The notes under the pieces: generated by a model | What the model was told of the DNA's origin: nothing | The model's database searches: none | Seen by the model: only the letters and a program-made list of their open reading frames with translations | In this document: positions 4,636-54,453 of the stretch, in pieces | Layout of the letters: each line of letters starts with the position of its first letter | Numbering within the stretch: position 1 is the stretch's first letter | Made by a program: the position numbers and the translations under genes | Sequence record: NC_070966.1 | DNA length: 64,000 nt | Reading direction: 5' to 3' (one strand)

Positions 4636-4725
4636 GGAGAGGTGGCCGAGTGGTTGAAGGCACCTGACTACTAATCAGGCATACGAGCAATCGTATCGTG
4701 GGTTCGAAACCCACCCTCTCCGCCA
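4636..4725 (+). tRNA. tRNA-Ser(ACT)
   Basis: Acceptor GGAGAGG/CCTCTCC plus GCCA; anticodon arm CCTGA-CTACTAA-TCAGG; long variable arm; T loop TTCGAAA. Confidence 0.9.
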
Positions 4726-5756: not shown

Positions 5757-5798
5757 TATTGCATACATTAGAAGACATAGTTTTTAGAGTAAATTTTG

Positions 5799-5876
5799 AG
5801 TGGTGTGCCTGTACCTATGGTACAGAGTGCTCGGAGATCCTCAGGTAGTTGGCGACTTGAGGATCTCTGCTACACT
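5799..5876 (+). ncRNA. candidate small structured RNA (two hairpins in a closing stem)
   Basis: CTGTACC/GGTACAG and GAGATCCTCAGG/CTTGAGGATCTC hairpins, weak AGTG/CACT closure, between two tRNAs. Confidence 0.35.
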
Positions 5877-5883
5877 TTATGAC

Positions 5884-5979: not shown

Positions 5980-6618
5980 ATGGAATGCCCTTATTGTTCT
6001 AAGCTCTTTAAGAGTGAGAGATCAATGTCTGGACATAAGGGATTCTGTAAATCAGGACCCTATCGTGCAGATACGATTGATCGTAATGCAAAAGCTAAGT
6101 TTAAATTAAGAAAAGTCAGACAACCTAGAGGTGTCGACAAGAGGACTCTTCCTGCGTCTTGTAAATTCTGTGACCGAGAATTTGAAAATCTATTTCAGAA
6201 GAATGGTCATCAAGTTAGATGTGAGAAGAATCCTAATCCAGCTGAATCGTCAGGTCCAATAGGATATAAACACACTGAAAGTACTCGAAAGAAGCTCTCT
6301 GACGCTCGAAGAGCCTTCCTTATTGAGAACCCAGATAAGCAATTCTTCAATTATCGTGATTCTAAAGCAGAGCACGATCTTGCTAAGAAATTTGATGAAG
6401 TAGGTATCCTCTACGTAAGACAGTATCGAGGATCTGACTGGAAGAGAGCTTACAAGGCAGACTTCTATCTTCCAGAGTTTAATTACATCATTGAAGTTAA
6501 TGGTGAGTTCAAGTATGAGAACGGTAAGCTGCATCAGTATTACCTAAACCGACAGAGATATATTGAATCATTTGGATATAAAGTGATTCAAGTACACGCG
6601 TATGAAGTGTACGAGTAG
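5980..6618 (+). CDS. free-standing putative homing endonuclease: two Cys/His zinc fingers plus a DUF559/Vsr-like PD-(D/E)XK domain
   Basis: CPYC...H..FC and CKFC...H..RC repeats; 'YKADFYLPEFNYIIEVNGEF...QRYIESFGYKVIQV'. Confidence 0.75.
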   Translation: MECPYCSKLFKSERSMSGHKGFCKSGPYRADTIDRNAKAKFKLRKVRQPRGVDKRTLPASCKFCDREFENLFQKNGHQVRCEKNPNPAESSGPIGYKHTESTRKKLSDARRAFLIENPDKQFFNYRDSKAEHDLAKKFDEVGILYVRQYRGSDWKRAYKADFYLPEFNYIIEVNGEFKYENGKLHQYYLNRQRYIESFGYKVIQVHAYEVYE

Positions 6619-6635
6619 TTAAAGTACATCTTGGA

Positions 6636-6907
6636 CATAGCTAGTGAGTTGGTTCTTCGTGAGTCATATCGTTTCTCCTTTCGGTATGAGTGTATGACAA
6701 GCTATGAGTTCTGGCATTCTATCTACCTTTAATCCTTTTCTGTAGATAGAATAACGCACGCGTCAAGATGTTATCCTCGAAAGTCAGACAGAGGATCTCA
6801 GTTTTATAATCTAGATAACGATATGCCCGATCGTTATGTTCCAGTAAGATCAAGTCTTCCTCCCAGACGTCACTCATTCCCCTCTTGAGTTTATCTTAAC
6901 GCACGCG
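6636..6907 (+). ncRNA. candidate structured RNA with pyrimidine-rich loops and two TAACGCACGCG repeats
   Basis: Hairpins TCATATCG/CGGTATGA, ATTCTATCTAC/GTAGATAGAAT, ATAACGAT/ATCGTTAT, GTCT/AGAC, ACTCA/TGAGT; identical 11-mers at 6752-6762 and 6897-6907; no ORF. Confidence 0.5.
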
Positions 6908-6956
6908 CTAGATTATAGGTCTCTGAAAACTGGACAGGAGACCATCAGTTCACTAG

Positions 6957-7043
6957 GGAGTCAGAAGTATGTAATTCCTTGTCTTACCTGGAGGTCACAT
7001 GCGGGTGATCTCGGTTACTTTGAGGTTTACTACTTCTGACTCC
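6957..7043 (+). ncRNA. candidate rod-shaped small RNA
   Basis: 13-bp terminal stem GGAGTCAGAAGTA/TACTTCTGACTCC enclosing GTAATT/GGTTAC and GAGGTCAC/GTGATCTC stems. Confidence 0.5.
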
Positions 7044-7055
7044 TGCCGGATTTAT

Positions 7056-7131
7056 TCTAGGTTAGCCAAGTTGGTAAGGCACGAGTTTTTGGTGCTCGCA
7101 TACCTAGGTTCGAACCCTAGACCTAGAACCA
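7056..7131 (+). tRNA. tRNA-Gln(TTG)
   Basis: TCTAGGT/ACCTAGA-ACCA; arm CGAGT-TTTTGGT-GCTCG. Confidence 0.92.
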
Positions 7132-7176: not shown

Positions 7177-7434
7177 ATGAGTAAAGCATCTGAAGTTATC
7201 AAGAAGCTGAATGAGACTAAACCTTCAGAAGATCTTCTGAAGAGCGAGGTCCAGGAAATTAAGCAGAAGATGATTAATCAAGGCATCGTCAGACCTGACT
7301 ATGCTGTTGAAAGATTTAGTCTGGTTAGTGATAGATTCAGAAATGTCTTGATACACGGTATTGTTCATGGAACAAATACTGCAGGATGGAGAGATCAGAT
7401 TAAAGATTTGAGATCTCAGAATTTGATTAGTTAG
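7177..7434 (+). CDS. hypothetical protein, MSKAS...NE N-terminal tag family
   Basis: N-terminus MSKASEVIKKLNE; its stop codon abuts tRNA-Gly. Confidence 0.7.
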   Translation: MSKASEVIKKLNETKPSEDLLKSEVQEIKQKMINQGIVRPDYAVERFSLVSDRFRNVLIHGIVHGTNTAGWRDQIKDLRSQNLIS

Positions 7435-7779: not shown

Positions 7780-8367
7780 ATGAAGTGCAGTTATTGTGAA
7801 ACTGAGTTTAGACATCTGAGTCGACATGTTAGATATTGTCCTCAGAATCCTGACAGAATTGTCAAGTTAAATCAGTTCTCTAAGGCTGAGTCATTAGGCT
7901 TACCTAAGCCGCCATTGTCTGAGAAATCTCGGAGAATGACTACTGAAAGAAATGCATCTCGAGTATGGACTCCAGAGATCAGATCTAAATTATCTAAGAG
8001 TATGATTAAGTACTTTAAAGATAATCCTGAAGCTCATCCGTACTTAAAGTATCATTCAAGTGGTGAATCATATGCTGAAGGATTCTTTCGAGAATTCTTT
8101 TTAAGTCATGATTTATCATTCAAACAAGAGTTGCAGGTTGGTCTCTATACACTTGACTTCGCATTTGAGGACAAGATGATTGATGTAGAGATCAACGGTA
8201 ACTTTCACTATAATAATCCTGGAATTGTTGAGAAAGATCAACGACGAAGACTCTTCTTGGAAGAGCGTGGATGGACTATTATAGAAGTTCGATGGTCTGA
8301 GTATAAGAAGATGAATGAGTCAGAGCGATCTGATTATCTGAATTCCTTATTATCTCAACTATCCTGA
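7780..8367 (+). CDS. free-standing putative homing endonuclease (zinc finger plus DUF559/Vsr-like domain)
   Basis: CSYC...H..YC; 'QVGLYTLDFAFEDKMIDVEINGNFH...DQRRRLFLEERGWTIIEV'. Confidence 0.8.
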   Translation: MKCSYCETEFRHLSRHVRYCPQNPDRIVKLNQFSKAESLGLPKPPLSEKSRRMTTERNASRVWTPEIRSKLSKSMIKYFKDNPEAHPYLKYHSSGESYAEGFFREFFLSHDLSFKQELQVGLYTLDFAFEDKMIDVEINGNFHYNNPGIVEKDQRRRLFLEERGWTIIEVRWSEYKKMNESERSDYLNSLLSQLS

Positions 8368-11860: not shown

Positions 11861-11925
11861 TTAACTTCTGTGATCTTCCGACCTTGACGCGACGAAGTAG
11901 CAGATAACTTATAAACTTTCTTGTT

Positions 11926-12513
11926 ATGTTTTATACTATCTATCGAATAACCAACAATGTTAACAGTAAGATATATGTTGGTATGCACCAGACTACTAAT
12001 TTAGATGACGGTTATATGGGATCGAGCAGATTATTGTTCAATGCTATGAAGAAGCACGGTCCTGATAACTTCTCTAAAGAGATTCTACATGTCTTTGATA
12101 ATAAAGAAGACATGTTTAGTATGGAAGCACAGATAGTAGACGAACAATTTGTTAAAAGATCTGATACATACAACCTAAAGACAGGTGGAGTAGGATCTTT
12201 TAGCTACATTAATTCATCTCCTGAATTTCGACAAAGGTCAATTTCAAGAATTCGTGAATTATGTAAGTCTGATACACCGTATCGTAGAATTCAATCTAAT
12301 AAATTGAAAGATGTTCGATACGATTTCACTGGTCATAAGCATACTGAAGAATCGATCTCTAAGATGAAAATATCTAAGGTCGGTCACGGAGAGGGTTCTT
12401 CGAATTCTCAGTATGGGACGATCTGGATTAATAATGGAGTGAAGAACTCTAAACTTAAATCTAATCTACCTATTCCAGATGGTTGGAGTAGAGGTAGAAA
12501 GATGGGCTTGTAG
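11926..12513 (+). CDS. GIY-YIG homing endonuclease (Seg-like, NUMOD3-type C-terminus)
   Basis: 'TIYRITNNVNSKIYVGMH...YMGS', 'TYNLKTGG', 'GHKHTEESISKM', 'NSQYGTIWINNG'. Confidence 0.9.
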   Translation: MFYTIYRITNNVNSKIYVGMHQTTNLDDGYMGSSRLLFNAMKKHGPDNFSKEILHVFDNKEDMFSMEAQIVDEQFVKRSDTYNLKTGGVGSFSYINSSPEFRQRSISRIRELCKSDTPYRRIQSNKLKDVRYDFTGHKHTEESISKMKISKVGHGEGSSNSQYGTIWINNGVKNSKLKSNLPIPDGWSRGRKMGL

Positions 12514-12578
12514 TGATAACGGGAGCACGATGCCTTTGCACGGCATAGGACAGGGTTCGATTCCCTGCTAGTCCACCA
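12504..12578 (+). tRNA. tRNA-Ala(TGC)
   Basis: GGGCTTG/CTAGTCC-ACCA with G3:U70; loop TTTGCAC. Confidence 0.93.
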
Positions 12579-12630
12579 CATTAGGTCGTATCAACCTGAG
12601 GTTAACCGTAGTTACTCAAACTGATACAAT

Positions 12631-13481: not shown

Positions 13482-13520
13482 GATAGAAGGCTAAAAGACG
13501 CGAATTATTCGCCTAGATTG

Positions 13521-13548
13521 AGCGAACTTAGCGTCTGATAGCCTTCCT
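13521..13548 (+). promoter_or_regulatory. conserved intergenic motif, copy 4 (3' arm of a long hairpin at 13486-13546)
   Basis: AGCGAAC ttagcgtctga TAGCCTTCCT; inverted partner GAAGGCTA..AGACGC..TTCGC upstream. Confidence 0.55.
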
Positions 13549-13565
13549 TCTTTGTCAGACGGTGA

Positions 13566-13871: not shown

Positions 13872-13880
13872 TGTGAATAA

Positions 13881-13972
13881 GGATAGTTGGCTGAGTCTGG
13901 TCTAAGGCGCTCGACTTGAAATCGAGAGGACGTGAGAGCGTTCCGTGGGTTCGAATCCTACACTATCCGCCA
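13881..13972 (+). tRNA. tRNA-Ser(TGA)
   Basis: GGATAGT/ACTATCC-GCCA; loop CTTGAAA; long variable arm. Confidence 0.93.
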
Positions 13973-13990
13973 TATTTATTATTGAGTATA

Positions 13991-14377
13991 ATGGATCAAA
14001 TAGTAAAGAAAAAGAGGACTAGACGTCCTGTTTCTTTAGAGACTAGAATGAAATTATCTGCTGCTCTTAAGGGTAAACCTCAGAGTAAAGTTTCTAATGA
14101 AGAGATTTTTGCAGATAATACTACTCATCCTAGACATCGTATTAAAGAAAGAATAATTCGAGATAATCTTATTCCATACGAGTGTGCAATCTGTGAAAAT
14201 GATGGTACATGGAATGGTGAACCTTTATCTTTACATCTAGACCATGAAAATGGTAAGAATAATGATAATCGTCTTGAGAATCTTAGATTCTTATGTCCTA
14301 ACTGTCATAGTCAAACAGATACTTATGCAGGTAAGAATAAGAAACGTAAGAGAATCAAGAGAGAAGAGCGTGTTTAG
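13991..14377 (+). CDS. HNH homing endonuclease (start moved to 13991; the track start at 13916 lies inside tRNA-Ser)
   Basis: CAICEN...LSLHLDHENGKNNDNRLENLRFLCPNCHSQT. Confidence 0.88.
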   Translation: MDQIVKKKRTRRPVSLETRMKLSAALKGKPQSKVSNEEIFADNTTHPRHRIKERIIRDNLIPYECAICENDGTWNGEPLSLHLDHENGKNNDNRLENLRFLCPNCHSQTDTYAGKNKKRKRIKREERV

Positions 14378-15223: not shown

Positions 15224-15358
15224 GACTTGATGTTGCGAAAGAAATGGTTACTTCGTATTCCAAACGAGAAATGTAGGTATCGAATCCTGCTATCCTAATA
15301 GGATATCGTCTAAGATAGGACGCTAAAATTTCCATTTCTGACACTATCTCATCAAGTC
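15224..15358 (+). ncRNA. Y-RNA-like unit 1 (permuted tRNA-Gly-like module)
   Basis: GACTTGATG-TTGCGA...TATCT-CATCAAGTC; inner AGAAATGG/CCATTTCT; loop ATTCCAA, then T arm, TATCC-TAATA-GGATA, then D arm. Confidence 0.75.
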
Positions 15359-15366
15359 TCATATTC

Positions 15367-15449
15367 AGATCTTGACGTTGCGACTAGTATCGGATACTTC
15401 GCTTTGGTTGCTAAAAACTCCGATGCAATATACTATCTCGTCAAGATCT
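15367..15449 (+). ncRNA. Y-RNA-like unit 2 (short; no T/D arms)
   Basis: AGATCTTGACG-TTGCGA...TATCT-CGTCAAGATCT; inner GTATCGGA/TCCGATGC; apical GC-TTTGGTT-GC. Confidence 0.7.
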
Positions 15450-15459
15450 TTCAGTTTAT

Positions 15460-15604
15460 CCTAACGTTGCGAATTAAACAGTTACTTCGATATCAAGCAG
15501 AAGGTCAATGGTTCGAATCCATTCATGCGACACGCGTTGCATGTAGCTCAGTTGGTTAGAGCGTCCGCCACCACAAGATCTGTTTAAGTCATTATCTCGT
15601 TAGG
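15460..15604 (+). ncRNA. Y-RNA-like unit 3 (permuted tRNA module)
   Basis: CCTAACG-TTGCGA...TATCT-CGTTAGG; TTAAACAG/CTGTTTAA; AATGG-TTCGAAT-CCATT, CATGCGAC/GTTGCATG, TAGCTCAGTTGGTTAGAGC. Confidence 0.8.
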
Positions 15605-15613
15605 TCCTTATAA

Positions 15614-15758
15614 CCTAGTGTTGCGATCGGTACAACTTCATCGCATTGTAAGCCCTGTGTCATTGGTTCAAATCCAATTCCTCCGTCCATCTATCGGAGG
15701 ATAGCTCAGTCTGGTAGAGCAAGGAAAGTATGTTGTATCAATATACCATCTCACTAGG
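15614..15758 (+). ncRNA. Y-RNA-like unit 4 (permuted tRNA-Thr-like module)
   Basis: CCTAGTG-TTGCGA...CATCT-CACTAGG; loop ATTGTAA; ATTGG-TTCAAAT-CCAAT, TCCTCCG/CGGAGGA, TAGCTCAGTCTGGTAGAGC. Confidence 0.8.
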
Positions 15759-15896
15759 ATCCTTATCTCATCCACCAACCTCGGTGTAAGAGTGGAAAGA
15801 GTTACGTGATCGTATGAGAATACGATCACAGTCATTTAGGTCATGTACCATGTGTACAAGGATCATTCGAAGGTGCTCGTCATCTTCAGCAAATAA

Positions 15897-16040
15897 TGTA
15901 GAGTTGCGAATATATCAAGTTCATCGCTTACCATATACCAAGCGGGTAGCTCAGTGGTTAGAGCACTAGGATGTAACAGTCGTAGAGGTCGTCGGTTCGA
16001 ATCCGACTCTAACTTCTTGATATAGACTTATCTCTCTACA
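15897..16040 (+). ncRNA. Y-RNA-like unit 5 (tRNA arms in normal D-anticodon-T order)
   Basis: TGTAGAG-TTGCGA...TATCT-CTCTACA; TATATCAAG/CTTGATATA; D arm TAGCTCAGTGGTTAGAGC precedes T arm GTCGG-TTCGAAT-CCGAC. Confidence 0.75.
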
Positions 16041-16049
16041 ACTTTTATA

Positions 16050-16184
16050 TGTACTGTTGCGACTAATACGGTTACTTCGTTGCAAATGAAACATAGGTTC
16101 GAATCCTATCCAGAGGATTGTCGTAAGATGACATCTGGCTGAGCATTGGTGAGCTCATCTCCGTATTAACTACATCTCAGTACA
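16050..16184 (+). ncRNA. Y-RNA-like unit 6 (permuted tRNA-Cys-like module)
   Basis: TGTACTG-TTGCGA...CATCT-CAGTACA; TAATACGG/CCGTATTA; loop TTGCAAA; ATAGG-TTCGAAT-CCTAT, CCAGA/TCTGG, TGAGC/GCTCA. Confidence 0.78.
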
Positions 16185-16195
16185 ATTACAATTCG

Positions 16196-16350
16196 TACCG
16201 TTGCGAATGATATGAATACATCGCTGTAGAACCGACGTCGTAAGACATGCTAGTTCAAGTCTAGCTCTCCGTCCCAATACTATGACGGAGATGGTGAAAT
16301 TGGTAGACACATCGGTAGATAAATCTTCATATCGGCTTACAATCTCGGTA
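16196..16350 (+). ncRNA. Y-RNA-like unit 7 (permuted type-II tRNA-Tyr-like module)
   Basis: TACCG-TTGCGA...AATCT-CGGTA; TGATATGAA/TTCATATCG; CTGTAGA, variable arm, GCTAG-TTCAAGT-CTAGC, TCTCCGTC/GACGGAGA, TGGTGAAATTGGTAGACAC. Confidence 0.8.
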
Positions 16351-16360
16351 TATCTTAGAC

Positions 16361-16385
16361 GCTATGTTGCGATAGTCCTCATAGC
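16361..16385 (+). promoter_or_regulatory. minimal Y-stem hairpin in the Ro60 5' leader
   Basis: GCTATG-TTGCGA-TAGTCCT-CATAGC, ending 20 nt before the Ro60 ATG. Confidence 0.55.
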
Positions 16386-16405
16386 ATTATCATAGGGAAA
16401 ATGTC

Positions 16406-53435: not shown

Positions 53436-53666
53436 TTATCCTAACGCAATAGCCATAGCAATTGCAGTTGAAGTATCCGATACAGAATTTGCATCAATTG
53501 CAGTAGATAGTTCTGCAAGTGTATCACGACTAGCAGGTGCACTACCTTTGATTGTATTGATCTTATCTGTTACAACAGTATTAACAAATTCTGTCGTAGC
53601 TACTCGGCTGGAACTATTATTATTCTCAGCAGTTATTCCGACGAATGGTGGAACTGATAGTGGCAT
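53436..53666 (-). CDS. small fibre-like structural protein
   Basis: 'RVATTEFV', 'APASRDTLAEL', C-terminal AIAMAIALG. Confidence 0.7.
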   Translation of the reverse strand: MPLSVPPFVGITAENNNSSSRVATTEFVNTVVTDKINTIKGSAPASRDTLAELSTAIDANSVSDTSTAIAMAIALG

Positions 53667-53670
53667 TGTA

Positions 53671-54453
53671 TTATCCTCTAATCCCTTCTAGAACAATATT
53701 TCCAGTGATGTTACCTGCAGATGCAATAAATCTAATAGCATTTTGACTACCTGTTAAAGTAGCTGACTTAGACGCTAGTGTAACTCCTGCATGCAAGCTA
53801 CTTGTAACTAGTCCTGTAAAGTGGGTAATCATATACTTGATAGTTGATGCTTTATTAAGATTAATCAACGTTGCAGTAATCAGAGAAGGATCATTAGCCA
53901 ATGTAGTAACTGTCATTTGATAACCAACTGCAGTACTTGAGGTACCATTTACAACTGCTGTACTATATCCATAATAAGCCAAAGAATGATTTCCACTCGT
54001 TGTGAATGTCGATCCGTTATCTGAACTTAATTGAATAAATCCTAAACCACCTGAAGTCAGTGCTAAGTCACCAACAATTCTCAGAGTCTTAAATGCTGCT
54101 AGATTAGTAATAGGAAAGTTTGCAACGTTCGTAAATGAGTAAGATCCAATAAGTTCCCAGGCATTAGGTCTAAATACTTTCGTGCCAGTCCCATCACCTA
54201 CTGCTATAGAGTTATCGTCGGTATCCCATTCCATCACACCCTCTTCGGTTGGAAGAGATGATGTGCTTTGAGTGAGAATAATCTTAGGACTCGATAAAGT
54301 TTTATTAGTAAGTGTTTCAGATCCAGTCAAGGATGCTTTGGCGTCTAAACTTGACTGAACAGTTGATGCGACTGCCTTTGTAGCTAGTGCGTCTTTAATC
54401 GAGGAGTTAGATCCTCGTAATGCTTCAATTGAGTCTCTAACTTTGCTCGACAT
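53671..54453 (-). CDS. fibre-like structural protein
   Basis: 'SETLTNKTL' fibre repeat; beta-rich C-terminus. Confidence 0.7.
   Translation of the reverse strand: MSSKVRDSIEALRGSNSSIKDALATKAVASTVQSSLDAKASLTGSETLTNKTLSSPKIILTQSTSSLPTEEGVMEWDTDDNSIAVGDGTGTKVFRPNAWELIGSYSFTNVANFPITNLAAFKTLRIVGDLALTSGGLGFIQLSSDNGSTFTTSGNHSLAYYGYSTAVVNGTSSTAVGYQMTVTTLANDPSLITATLINLNKASTIKYMITHFTGLVTSSLHAGVTLASKSATLTGSQNAIRFIASAGNITGNIVLEGIRG

What the first reader, a model, noticed from the sequence alone, without database searches (positions are those of the whole stretch)
6636..6907. Noncoding region of hairpins with anti-Shine-Dalgarno-like loops, in two modules ending in TAACGCACGCG
Seen: four hairpins expose pyrimidine loops (TTTCTCCTTT, CTTTAATCCTTTTCT, TCCTCCC, TTCCCCTCT) complementary to AGGAG/GGGAGG/GAGGGG. 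An identical 11-mer directly follows a stem at 6752 and at 6897. Established: C/U-rich loops in sRNAs such as S. aureus RNAIII seed pairing to ribosome-binding sites. Inference: a phage sRNA or sRNA pair that occludes SD sequences (host shut-off or timing of phage translation), with the 11-mer as a protein or processing site.
Basis: partly seen in the sequence, partly recalled or inferred. Interest (0 to 1): 0.65.

Follow-up and report, generated by a model that had tools for sequence, protein, structure and literature searches.

The report
Folded two-domain RNA in phage tRNA array
The unannotated 437-base gap before tRNA-Gln in a Rhizobium phage is a real, conserved, folded non-coding RNA built from two similar halves. 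Several of its exposed loops copy the ribosome's mRNA-docking tail, so it may block ribosome-binding sites, but that role is untested.

Summary
The window is Rhizobium phage RHph_TM30 (Kleczkowskaviridae). The finding lies in a 437-nt unannotated spacer (6619-7055) between a homing-endonuclease gene and tRNA-Gln, inside a + strand array of 20 tRNA genes.

- **Anatomy:** the four pyrimidine-loop hairpins and the twice-occurring 11-mer are real and non-random. The 11-mer sits in the middle of two paralogous domains, not at their ends. A very stable 89-nt hairpin follows, just before tRNA-Gln.
- **Conservation:** contigs of a roughly 90%-identical relative in a root metatranscriptome cover exactly this spacer and not the flanking protein genes. 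They carry three clean compensatory double changes in three different stems, new G-U wobbles valid only on the + strand, and a frameshift in the only antisense ORF.
- **Known families:** no Rfam family matches. No homologue was found in phage, viral, metagenome or 401 Hyphomicrobiales genome searches.
- **Function:** loop a shares an 8-mer with the host-order 16S rRNA 3' tail. However, a scan of 335 phage translation starts found no specific target.

Verdict: a genuine new structured phage RNA, and the anti-Shine-Dalgarno function remains plausible but unproven. The scan has noted the same kind of RNA (phage small RNAs with such loops) on other phages' DNA, but not this sequence.

The parts
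6619..7055 (+). Whole non-coding element: the spacer from the homing-endonuclease stop codon to the tRNA-Gln 5' end
   Evidence: Unannotated in GenBank. z -3.6. A relative's RNA-library contigs align to exactly 6615-7057. Only one variable site (6871) among 10 isolates.
6626..6633 (+). P1 5' strand (ACATCTTG), which pairs with 6764-6771 and closes domain 1
   Evidence: Forms when the domain is folded alone. Five of 8 pairs are identical and 3 are compensated relative to P1' of domain 2 (read from the sequence). It is not favoured in the full-length ensemble.
6664..6689 (+). Hairpin a, loop TTTCTCCTTT; 6675-6682 is CTCCTTTC, identical to the 16S 3' tail
   Evidence: The loop and 3' arm are unchanged in the relative, but the stem is weakened.
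6716..6752 (+). Hairpin b, 11-bp stem, 15-nt loop CTTTAATCCTTTTCT
   Evidence: z -4.3. Compensatory change 6720 T>C with 6748 A>G. In the relative the top of the stem is rebuilt and the loop core ATCCTTT is kept.
6752..6762 (+). 11-mer copy 1 (TAACGCACGCG), a junction strand of domain 1
   Evidence: Lies in the 47-nt stretch 6753-6799 that shows no change in the relative.
6764..6771 (+). P1 3' strand (CAAGATGT)
6773..6803 (+). Hairpin c (stem ATCCTC/GAGGAT, loop GAAAGTCAGACA) followed by TCAGTT
   Evidence: Paralogous to hairpin g, with 3 compensated pairs. Unchanged in the relative.
6805..6814 (+). P1' 5' strand (TATAATCTAG), which pairs with 6908-6917 and closes domain 2
   Evidence: Perfect 10-bp inverted repeat. 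Forms when the domain is folded alone. 6806 A>G gives a G-U pair.
6815..6837 (+). Hairpin d, 8-bp stem, loop ATGCCCG
   Evidence: Compensatory change 6820 G>A with 6832 C>T.
6854..6868 (+). Hairpin e, 4-bp stem, loop TCCTCCC
   Evidence: The relative has 6865 A>G (a U-G wobble on the + strand) and loop CCCTCCC.
6872..6890 (+). Hairpin f, 5-bp stem, loop TTCCCCTCT
   Evidence: No substitutions are listed in the relative, but unlisted insertions probably lie nearby, so it was not evaluated.
6897..6907 (+). 11-mer copy 2, a junction strand of domain 2
6908..6917 (+). P1' 3' strand (CTAGATTATA)
6918..6950 (+). Hairpin g (7-bp stem, loop GAAAACTGGACA) followed by TCAGTT
   Evidence: Compensatory change 6919 G>A with 6942 C>T.
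6956..7044 (+). Hairpin h, a long irregular hairpin with a 13-bp perfect base, 11 nt before tRNA-Gln
   Evidence: -45.4 kcal/mol, z -5.9, and 10.5 kcal/mol better on the + strand than on the - strand. Inverted repeat I2.
7056..7131 (+). tRNA-Gln(UUG). RNase P cleavage at its 5' end would set the element's 3' end (inferred).
5980..6618 (+). Homing-endonuclease gene upstream (DUF559/NUMOD3-type). It is context, not part of the RNA.
   Evidence: It is partly deleted or replaced in phage Y65 while the spacer stays intact.

Best explanation
The spacer encodes a stable, structured non-coding RNA of about 440 nt on the + strand.

**Biogenesis (inferred).** It is made as part of the tRNA-array transcript. 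RNase P cutting at the 5' end of tRNA-Gln releases its 3' end, and the long hairpin h protects that end.

**Architecture (shown, except P1/P1', which are inferred).** There are two paralogous domains. In each, a closing helix (P1 or P1') encloses hairpins with pyrimidine loops. A conserved single-stranded 11-mer follows, then a hairpin with a GAAR-N4-GACA loop, then UCAGUU.

**Mechanism (inferred).** The four accessible C/U loops imitate the 3' tail of host 16S rRNA. They most likely pair with GGAG/AAGGAG-type Shine-Dalgarno sequences and occlude ribosome binding on a set of host or phage mRNAs. The 11-mer core would serve as a protein-binding or tertiary-structure site.

That it is a real structured RNA is well supported (about 0.8). 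The anti-Shine-Dalgarno mechanism itself is a moderate bet.
For: - **Fold:** z -3.6 for the whole spacer. Hairpins b and h have z -4.3 and -5.9.
- **Strand:** the per-hairpin energies sum to -100.7 kcal/mol on the + strand against -83.0 on the - strand. All neighbouring genes are on the + strand.
- **Covariation with a relative:** root-metatranscriptome contigs of a relative cover 6615-7057 but not the homing-endonuclease gene or the 85-aa ORF. They carry compensatory pairs 6720/6748, 6820/6832 and 6919/6942, and + strand wobbles at 6665, 6689, 6806 and 6865.
- **Paralogue covariation:** P1 against P1' and hairpin c against hairpin g differ by compensated pairs.
- **11-mer:** unique to these two sites in the genome.
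- **Loops:** accessible in the ensemble. Loop a shares the 8-mer CTCCTTTC with the 16S 3' end of the host's order.
- **Phage ribosome-binding sites:** AGGAG, GGAGA and AAGGA are the commonest upstream words.
- **Precedent:** multi-hairpin anti-Shine-Dalgarno small RNAs are established in Rhizobiales (PMC4615179).
Against: - No transcript data exist for this phage itself. The run holds assembled contigs only, which cannot show ends, strand or level.
- Only one diverged relative is available, and its list of differences was truncated.
- Hairpin a is not structurally kept in the relative.
- The most conserved part is the 11-mer and hairpin c, not the C/U loops.
- Loop-to-translation-start duplex energies are only about 1 kcal/mol better than internal controls, and no start site stands out.
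- An anti-Shine-Dalgarno RNA would also hit the phage's own mRNAs.
- P1 and P1' are not favoured in the full-length thermodynamic ensemble.
- Other spacers in this array are also strongly folded, so folding alone is not special here.
Confidence: 0.4

Rival explanations
1. It is a large structured RNA whose function lies in its three-dimensional architecture: binding a protein or the ribosome, or self-assembling. This would parallel the ROOL and GOLLD RNAs that phages carry next to tRNA islands. The C/U loops and the 11-mer would then be contact surfaces rather than mRNA seeds.
For: - The architecture has two domains, each with a conserved single-stranded junction 11-mer and conserved large loops c and g.
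- The junction and hairpin c are the most conserved part.
- It sits inside a phage tRNA array, as ROOL and GOLLD often do; their function is unknown and GOLLD pulls down ribosomes (bioRxiv 10.1101/2024.12.08.627333).
- No specific mRNA target was found.
Against: - No Rfam match to ROOL, GOLLD or any other family, even at E up to 10.
- It is far smaller and simpler than those RNAs.
- No pseudoknot or tertiary covariation could be tested.
- A kissing interaction between loops c/g and loops a/b is not supported by the relative's loop changes (read).
Confidence: 0.25
2. It is a passive structured spacer of the tRNA precursor. Its hairpins guide or protect processing (RNase E, RNase P, exonucleases) and have no function in trans.
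For: - Other spacers of the same array are equally strongly folded: 5757-5883 has z -4.6 and 13482-13565 has z -4.7.
- One of these is also covered by the relative's RNA contig (5802-5882).
- Hairpin h sits right next to the tRNA 5' end.
Against: - At 437 nt it is far longer than any processing signal needs to be.
- The duplicated domain plan has a conserved 11-mer and conserved loop sequences while stems drift.
- It has a lower substitution density than the adjacent homing-endonuclease gene in Y65: 1 change in 437 nt against 6 in 119 nt.
Confidence: 0.2
3. It is a DNA-level element: a replication origin, a recombination or homing site, or a protein-binding iteron pair.
For: - Two direct 11-mers lie 145 bp apart and occur nowhere else in the genome.
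- The element is next to a homing-endonuclease gene.
- Several AAGAT/ATCTT inverted repeats are present.
Against: - G-U pairs make the + strand fold 17.7 kcal/mol better than the - strand, which has no meaning for DNA.
- New wobbles in the relative keep RNA pairing only.
- The element is present in RNA-library contigs without the flanking genes.
- The endonuclease gene varies independently of the spacer.
Confidence: 0.05
4. The element works on the minus strand, either through the 52-aa ORF 6877-6719 or as an RNA with GGA-rich loops that sponges a CsrA-type protein.
For: - On the minus strand the loops read AAAGGAGAAA, GGGAGGA and AGAGGGGAA.
- An ATG-initiated ORF of 52 aa exists there.
Against: - The ORF has no Pfam hit and no homologue.
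- The relative has a 1-nt deletion at 6871 inside the ORF.
- No CsrA gene was found in the phage, and none scored over the cut-off in 101 sampled genomes of the host's order.
- The minus strand folds worse.
- All surrounding transcription units are on the + strand.
Confidence: 0.03

Closest known systems
Cuckoo / alpha-r14 / CcsR (RSs0680) small RNAs of Rhizobiales and Rhodobacterales
   Same: They have two to four adjacent hairpins whose loops carry an anti-Shine-Dalgarno-like pyrimidine motif while the stems vary. They occur in the host's own order (PMC4615179).
   Different: - The defining loop motif CCUCCUCCC is absent here. Only one 1-mismatch copy exists (6856-6864), which is at chance level in the window.
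- No Rfam hit.
- This element is phage-encoded and embedded in a tRNA array, and has extra conserved parts (11-mer, hairpins c, g and h).
- No homologue in 401 Hyphomicrobiales genomes.
RNA species I and II of the phage T4 tRNA gene region
   Same: They are small stable RNAs of unknown function encoded among phage tRNA genes, next to a homing-endonuclease gene (the T4 region map in PMC2330249). That they are processed from the tRNA precursor is from my own knowledge.
   Different: No sequence or structure relationship was tested, and no Rfam model hit. The T4 RNAs are single small RNAs of about 140 nt (from my own knowledge), not a 440-nt two-domain RNA, and are not known for anti-Shine-Dalgarno loops.
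ROOL and GOLLD large ornate RNAs
   Same: They are large structured non-coding RNAs of phages and prophages, often beside tRNA islands, with unknown function.
   Different: No match to their Rfam models. This element is smaller (about 440 nt against about 580-800 nt or more) and has a much narrower distribution (one phage genus plus one metatranscriptome relative).
S. aureus RNAIII-type C-rich-loop small RNAs, and the phiKZ 141-nt small RNA noted elsewhere in this scan
   Same: They have exposed C/U-rich hairpin loops proposed or shown to seed pairing with ribosome-binding sites (PMC4615179 discussion; scan notes s1-157406 and s1-160023, which I did not check).
   Different: They are unrelated in sequence and have a different host range. 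Here there are four loops in a duplicated domain, and targets are unknown.
3'ETS-leuZ of E. coli, a functional RNA cut out of a tRNA precursor spacer (from my own knowledge)
   Same: It is a trans-acting RNA released from a tRNA operon transcript by the tRNA-processing nucleases.
   Different: It acts as a sponge for small RNAs, is much shorter, and has no anti-Shine-Dalgarno loops. Biogenesis of the phage RNA is only inferred.

Membership tests
Cuckoo / alpha-r14 / CcsR small RNAs | Each of 2-4 adjacent hairpin loops carries CCUCCUCCC | tested here: not met
   There is no exact copy in the spacer. One 1-mismatch copy lies at 6856-6864, and 7 such matches occur in the window against 5.4 expected.
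Cuckoo / alpha-r14 / CcsR small RNAs | Match to the family's covariance models (Rfam alpha-proteobacterial small-RNA families) | tested here: not met
   cmscan of 6600-7060 at E up to 10 gave only a 14.9-bit RAGATH-35 chance hit.
Cuckoo / alpha-r14 / CcsR small RNAs | Hairpins of 24-50 nt with loops of 9-27 nt and no multiloop | tested here: inconclusive
   Hairpins a and b fit these sizes. Hairpins e and f are 15 and 19 nt, with loops of 7 and 9 nt. The domain folds contain multiloops.
ROOL / GOLLD | Match to Rfam models RF03087 / RF01998 | tested here: not met
   No hit.
ROOL / GOLLD | Location in a phage or prophage next to a tRNA island | tested here: met
   The element lies inside a 20-tRNA array.
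ROOL / GOLLD | Homo-oligomeric nanocage assembly | not testable with these tools
   Needs biophysical or cryo-EM work.
Bacterial Y RNA (YrlA) / Ro60 partner RNAs of this phage | Ro-binding stem (the local copies carry GUUGCGA) and a tRNA-like module | tested here: not met
   The motif appears in all eight Y RNA stems (seven units plus the stem-only copy) at 15224-16405 and is absent from 6619-7055. No YrlA hit in the spacer.
tRNA or tRNA-like pseudogene | Cloverleaf detected by ARAGORN or Rfam RF00005 | tested here: not met
   There are no calls between 5961 and 7056.
Group I intron carrying the homing-endonuclease ORF | Intron core match and a split host gene | tested here: not met
   No intron family hit. 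The flanking tRNA-Arg and tRNA-Gln are both intact.
CsrB/RsmZ-type CsrA sponge (minus strand) | A CsrA/RsmA protein in the host or phage | tested here: not met
   PF02599 was not found in the phage. It scored over the cut-off in 0 of 101 sampled genomes of the host's order.

The most novel reading that the evidence does not exclude
This is a third, smaller class of the enigmatic large structured RNAs that phages keep in their tRNA islands, alongside ROOL and GOLLD. It would be a two-domain particle that uses four copies of a 16S-tail mimic to capture Shine-Dalgarno-bearing mRNAs or ribosomal components as a multivalent decoy, rewiring translation during infection, instead of acting as a classical one-seed small RNA.
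Probability: 0.12. Interest if true: 0.8.

Novelty: new variant of a known kind. Interest (0 to 1): 0.5.

Why it matters
Phage-encoded regulatory RNAs are few, and the large structured RNAs that sit in phage tRNA islands have no known function. This is a compact case that can be handled genetically, in a cultivable Rhizobium phage. It has a duplicated domain plan and a conserved junction motif, and its loops copy the ribosome's mRNA-docking sequence. These features give clear handles for mutation and pull-down experiments. If the loops do bind Shine-Dalgarno sites, this would be a phage version of the anti-Shine-Dalgarno small RNAs that its rhizobial hosts use themselves. It would also be made by the tRNA-processing machinery. 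If they do not, it is still a new structured RNA family whose partner could shed light on why phages pair such RNAs with tRNA arrays, here beside a Ro60/Y-RNA locus.

Tried and rejected
**Searches for relatives**
- blastn against 50,697 phage records found only the 10 near-identical Cuauhnahuacvirus records.
- tblastn or protein searches with the neighbouring 85-aa, 94-aa and 507-aa proteins found only the same phages.
- Two module patterns scanned against IMG/VR found nothing.
- The 24-base module pattern found nothing in JGI metagenomes.
- A looser two-copy 10-mer pattern returned 240 loci from metagenomes and genomes. All were chance hits in GC-rich DNA, and none resembled the element by nhmmer or blastn.
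- 401 Hyphomicrobiales genomes gave only 23-28 nt chance matches.
- A covariance model of the 11-mer/hairpin module found no third copy in the phage genome.

**Other tests**
- Rfam gave no family for the spacer.
- The sigma-70 promoter and intrinsic-terminator scan found nothing convincing inside or flanking the spacer.
- The minus-strand 52-aa ORF is rejected: no homologue, and a frameshift in the relative.
- The CsrA-sponge reading is rejected.
- Target scan of the four loops against 335 phage translation-initiation regions: the best hit was loop b against a 76-aa minus-strand gene starting at window 53666 (-18.9 kcal/mol). Internal control windows reach -19.3, so no target is claimed.
- Long-range pairs of the full-length minimum-free-energy fold are not supported by the relative.
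- Kissing interactions between loops c/g and loops a/b are not supported by the relative's loop changes.
- I ran no further search on stop-to-stop frames of the spacer to fish for the relative's contigs, because the chance of success was low.

Full report
**Where it is.** The window is identical to Rhizobium phage RHph_TM30 (MN988521.1, positions 124001-188000; Kleczkowskaviridae, Cuauhnahuacvirus). The finding lies in a 437-nt stretch with no annotation (6619-7055). Upstream is a homing-endonuclease gene (5980-6618; weak DUF559/NUMOD3 hits). Downstream is tRNA-Gln (7056-7131). The stretch sits inside a + strand array of 20 tRNA genes interspersed with small ORFs. The same array holds a Ro60 gene with Y-RNA-like units, as earlier scan notes say; I saw their sub-threshold YrlA hits and shared GUUGCGA stems.

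**The observation.** All four pyrimidine-loop hairpins exist at the stated places, and the loops are predicted to be open.
- Hairpins a (8 bp) and b (11 bp, z -4.3) are solid. Hairpins e (4 bp) and f (5 bp) are marginal by themselves.
- The 11-mer occurs exactly twice in the window (0.16 expected) and nowhere else in the 207-kb genome.
- A lax scan gives 49 pyrimidine-loop hairpins on the + strand of the 64-kb window, 5 of them in this spacer. Three of the 10 hairpins with purely pyrimidine loops fall within 230 nt here. By a Poisson estimate of mine, this clustering remains unlikely (about 0.002-0.004) after correcting for the number of windows.

- Each 11-mer is followed by AGAT two to three bases later. 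A second hairpin then follows: c (6773-6796) in the first module and g (6918-6943) in the second. Their 12-nt loops are related (GAAAGTCAGACA and GAAAACTGGACA), and each is followed by TCAGTT.
- Aligned, stems c and g share three pairs and differ by three compensated pairs.
- Folded separately, each half closes with a long-range helix whose 3' strand starts right after the 11-mer. These are P1 (6626-6633 with 6764-6771) and P1' (6805-6814 with 6908-6917). Aligned from the 11-mer side, 5 of 8 pairs are identical and 3 are changed on both sides with pairing kept (read from the sequence).
- So the element is a duplicated domain: closing helix, C/U-loop hairpins, single-stranded 11-mer, GAAR-loop hairpin, TCAGTT.
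- An 89-nt hairpin h follows (6956-7044; -45.4 kcal/mol, z -5.9) and ends 11 nt before tRNA-Gln.
- Caveat: in the full-length thermodynamic ensemble P1 and P1' are out-competed by other pairings among several AAGAT/ATCTT segments. The two-domain fold is therefore an inference that rests on the parallel architecture.

**Strand and coding.**
- Summed over the eight local structures, the + strand folds at -100.7 kcal/mol and the - strand at -83.0 kcal/mol. Most of the gap comes from G-U pairs in hairpins a and h.
- The only sizeable ORF is antisense (6877-6719, 52 aa). It has no Pfam hit and no homologue in the phage database or the 5.8-billion-cluster protein set.
- No promoter-like or terminator-like site separates the modules.

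**Comparative evidence.**
- The ten GenBank relatives are at least 99% identical here. The spacer has a single variable site (6871), while the last 119 nt of the endonuclease gene have six changes in phage Y65. The surrounding array is 93-99% identical.
- The endonuclease gene is partly deleted or replaced in Y65 while the spacer is intact. The RNA is therefore not a passenger of that mobile gene.
- No other relative was found in any collection searched (see "Tried and rejected").
- The one informative relative came from a public root metatranscriptome (run X1). Two contigs of 350 and 266 nt align to 6615-6900 and 6889-7057, at about 90% identity in aligned letters, and their flanks then turn unlike the window.
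- Nothing from that run lies on the endonuclease gene or on the 85-aa ORF 7177-7434. A further contig does cover another tRNA spacer (5802-5882).
- Contigs cannot prove transcription. However, assembling only non-coding spacers of a rare phage from an RNA library is what abundant stable RNA would give and what contaminating DNA would not.

**What the relative's differences show.**
- Three double substitutions each turn one Watson-Crick pair into another, in three different stems: 6720 T>C with 6748 A>G (hairpin b), 6820 G>A with 6832 C>T (d), and 6919 G>A with 6942 C>T (g).
- With 34 listed substitutions over about 440 nt and about 80 local pairs, I estimate about 0.1 such events by chance.
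- Single changes at 6665, 6689, 6806 and 6865 give G-U pairs that are valid only on the + strand.
- The top of hairpin b is rebuilt with indels into a new 4-bp extension. Its loop shrinks to 9 nt but keeps AUCCUUU.
- Loop a is unchanged. Loop e becomes CCCUCCC.
- A 47-nt stretch (6753-6799: 11-mer, linker, hairpin c) shows no change, and none is listed around the second 11-mer.
- A 1-nt deletion at 6871 frameshifts the antisense ORF.
- Against the model: hairpin a loses its two top pairs and folds weakly, the helices that extend it are broken, and the full-length long-range pairs are not supported.
- The tool truncated its lists. About 8 substitutions beyond 6970, and about 14 inserted letters that probably lie in 6872-6900, were not shown. 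Hairpins f and h could therefore not be evaluated.

**The anti-Shine-Dalgarno idea.**
- The 16-mer GGATCACCTCCTTTCT is present in 55 of 101 sampled genomes of the host's order, and it lies at the very 3' end of the 16S rRNA model in a locus I checked.
- Loop a with its closing base reads CTCCTTTC, an 8-mer of that tail. Loop b has TCCTTTTCT (TCCTTTC in the relative). Loop e has CCTCC.
- The commonest words upstream of phage starts are AGGAG, GGAGA and AAGGA, although my start choice favoured such words.
- Duplex energies of the four loops with 335 phage translation starts are only about 1 kcal/mol better than with internal coding controls. The best single hit (-18.9 kcal/mol) is matched by a control (-19.3).
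- Pairing with ribosome-binding sites in general is therefore plausible, but no specific target emerges. The host genome could not be examined.

**Comparison with known systems.**
- The nearest functional analogue is the cuckoo/alpha-r14/CcsR family of the host's own order: 2-4 hairpins with CCUCCUCCC loops (PMC4615179). The motif test and the Rfam test both fail here. The element may work like these RNAs, but it is not a member of the family.
- By context, the analogues are T4's RNA species I and II in its tRNA region (PMC2330249) and the ROOL and GOLLD RNAs, which are "often near tRNA islands" in phages and have no known function. There is no model match to these either.
- The minus-strand CsrA-sponge alternative fails because no CsrA gene was found in the phage or in 101 genomes of the order.
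- The scan has noted phage small RNAs with similar loops in unrelated phages (phiKZ-type and others). I did not test those notes. They show that the kind is recurrent, not that this sequence was seen before.

**Verdict.** This is a real, apparently undescribed structured RNA, restricted so far to one rhizobiophage genus plus one environmental relative. That it is a folded + strand RNA under selection is well supported (about 0.8). I rate the idea that it acts by occluding Shine-Dalgarno sequences at about 0.4. An architecture- or partner-binding role (0.25) and a passive processing spacer (0.2) are the main rivals.

Noticed in passing
window 5757-5883: The 127-nt spacer between tRNA-Lys and tRNA-Arg is strongly folded (-44.7 kcal/mol, z -4.6, with a 15-bp perfect hairpin). 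The relative's RNA-library contig also covers 5802-5882. It may be another stable spacer RNA.
   Followed up: partly
window 13482-13565: Just before tRNA-Asn, the minimum-free-energy fold of this stretch is a long hairpin (z -4.7). An alternative local 10-bp hairpin at 13532-13561 would present an all-pyrimidine loop CCTTCCTTCT. This would be a fifth anti-Shine-Dalgarno-like loop in the tRNA array, outside the flagged spacer.
   Followed up: partly
window 7177-7434: An 85-aa ORF is not annotated in any of the 10 GenBank records but is 100% identical in all of them. It has no Pfam family and no relative in IMG/VR.
   Followed up: partly
window 7780-8367 and 6001-6279: The homing-endonuclease genes are polymorphic. 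The second one (between tRNA-Ile and tRNA-Met) is absent from phages Y65 and TM21B. The N-terminal part of the first has no counterpart in Y65 (279 nt against 151 nt).
   Followed up: partly
window 11909-12581 and 13873-14367: Two further non-coding stretches of the tRNA array have no counterpart in phage Y65 and are replaced by segments of other lengths. The array is a mosaic of swappable spacers.
   Followed up: no
window 4636-4725: ARAGORN calls a tRNA-Ser with anticodon ACT (A at position 34), which is unusual for a bacterial-type tRNA.
   Followed up: no
window 53661-53687: A + strand stretch is 78% identical to 6712-6738 (hairpin b's 5' arm and loop). The mRNA of the minus-strand 76-aa gene that starts at 53666 is therefore complementary to loop b across its ribosome-binding site (-18.9 kcal/mol). 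This is not significant against controls, but it is the best candidate phage target.
   Followed up: partly
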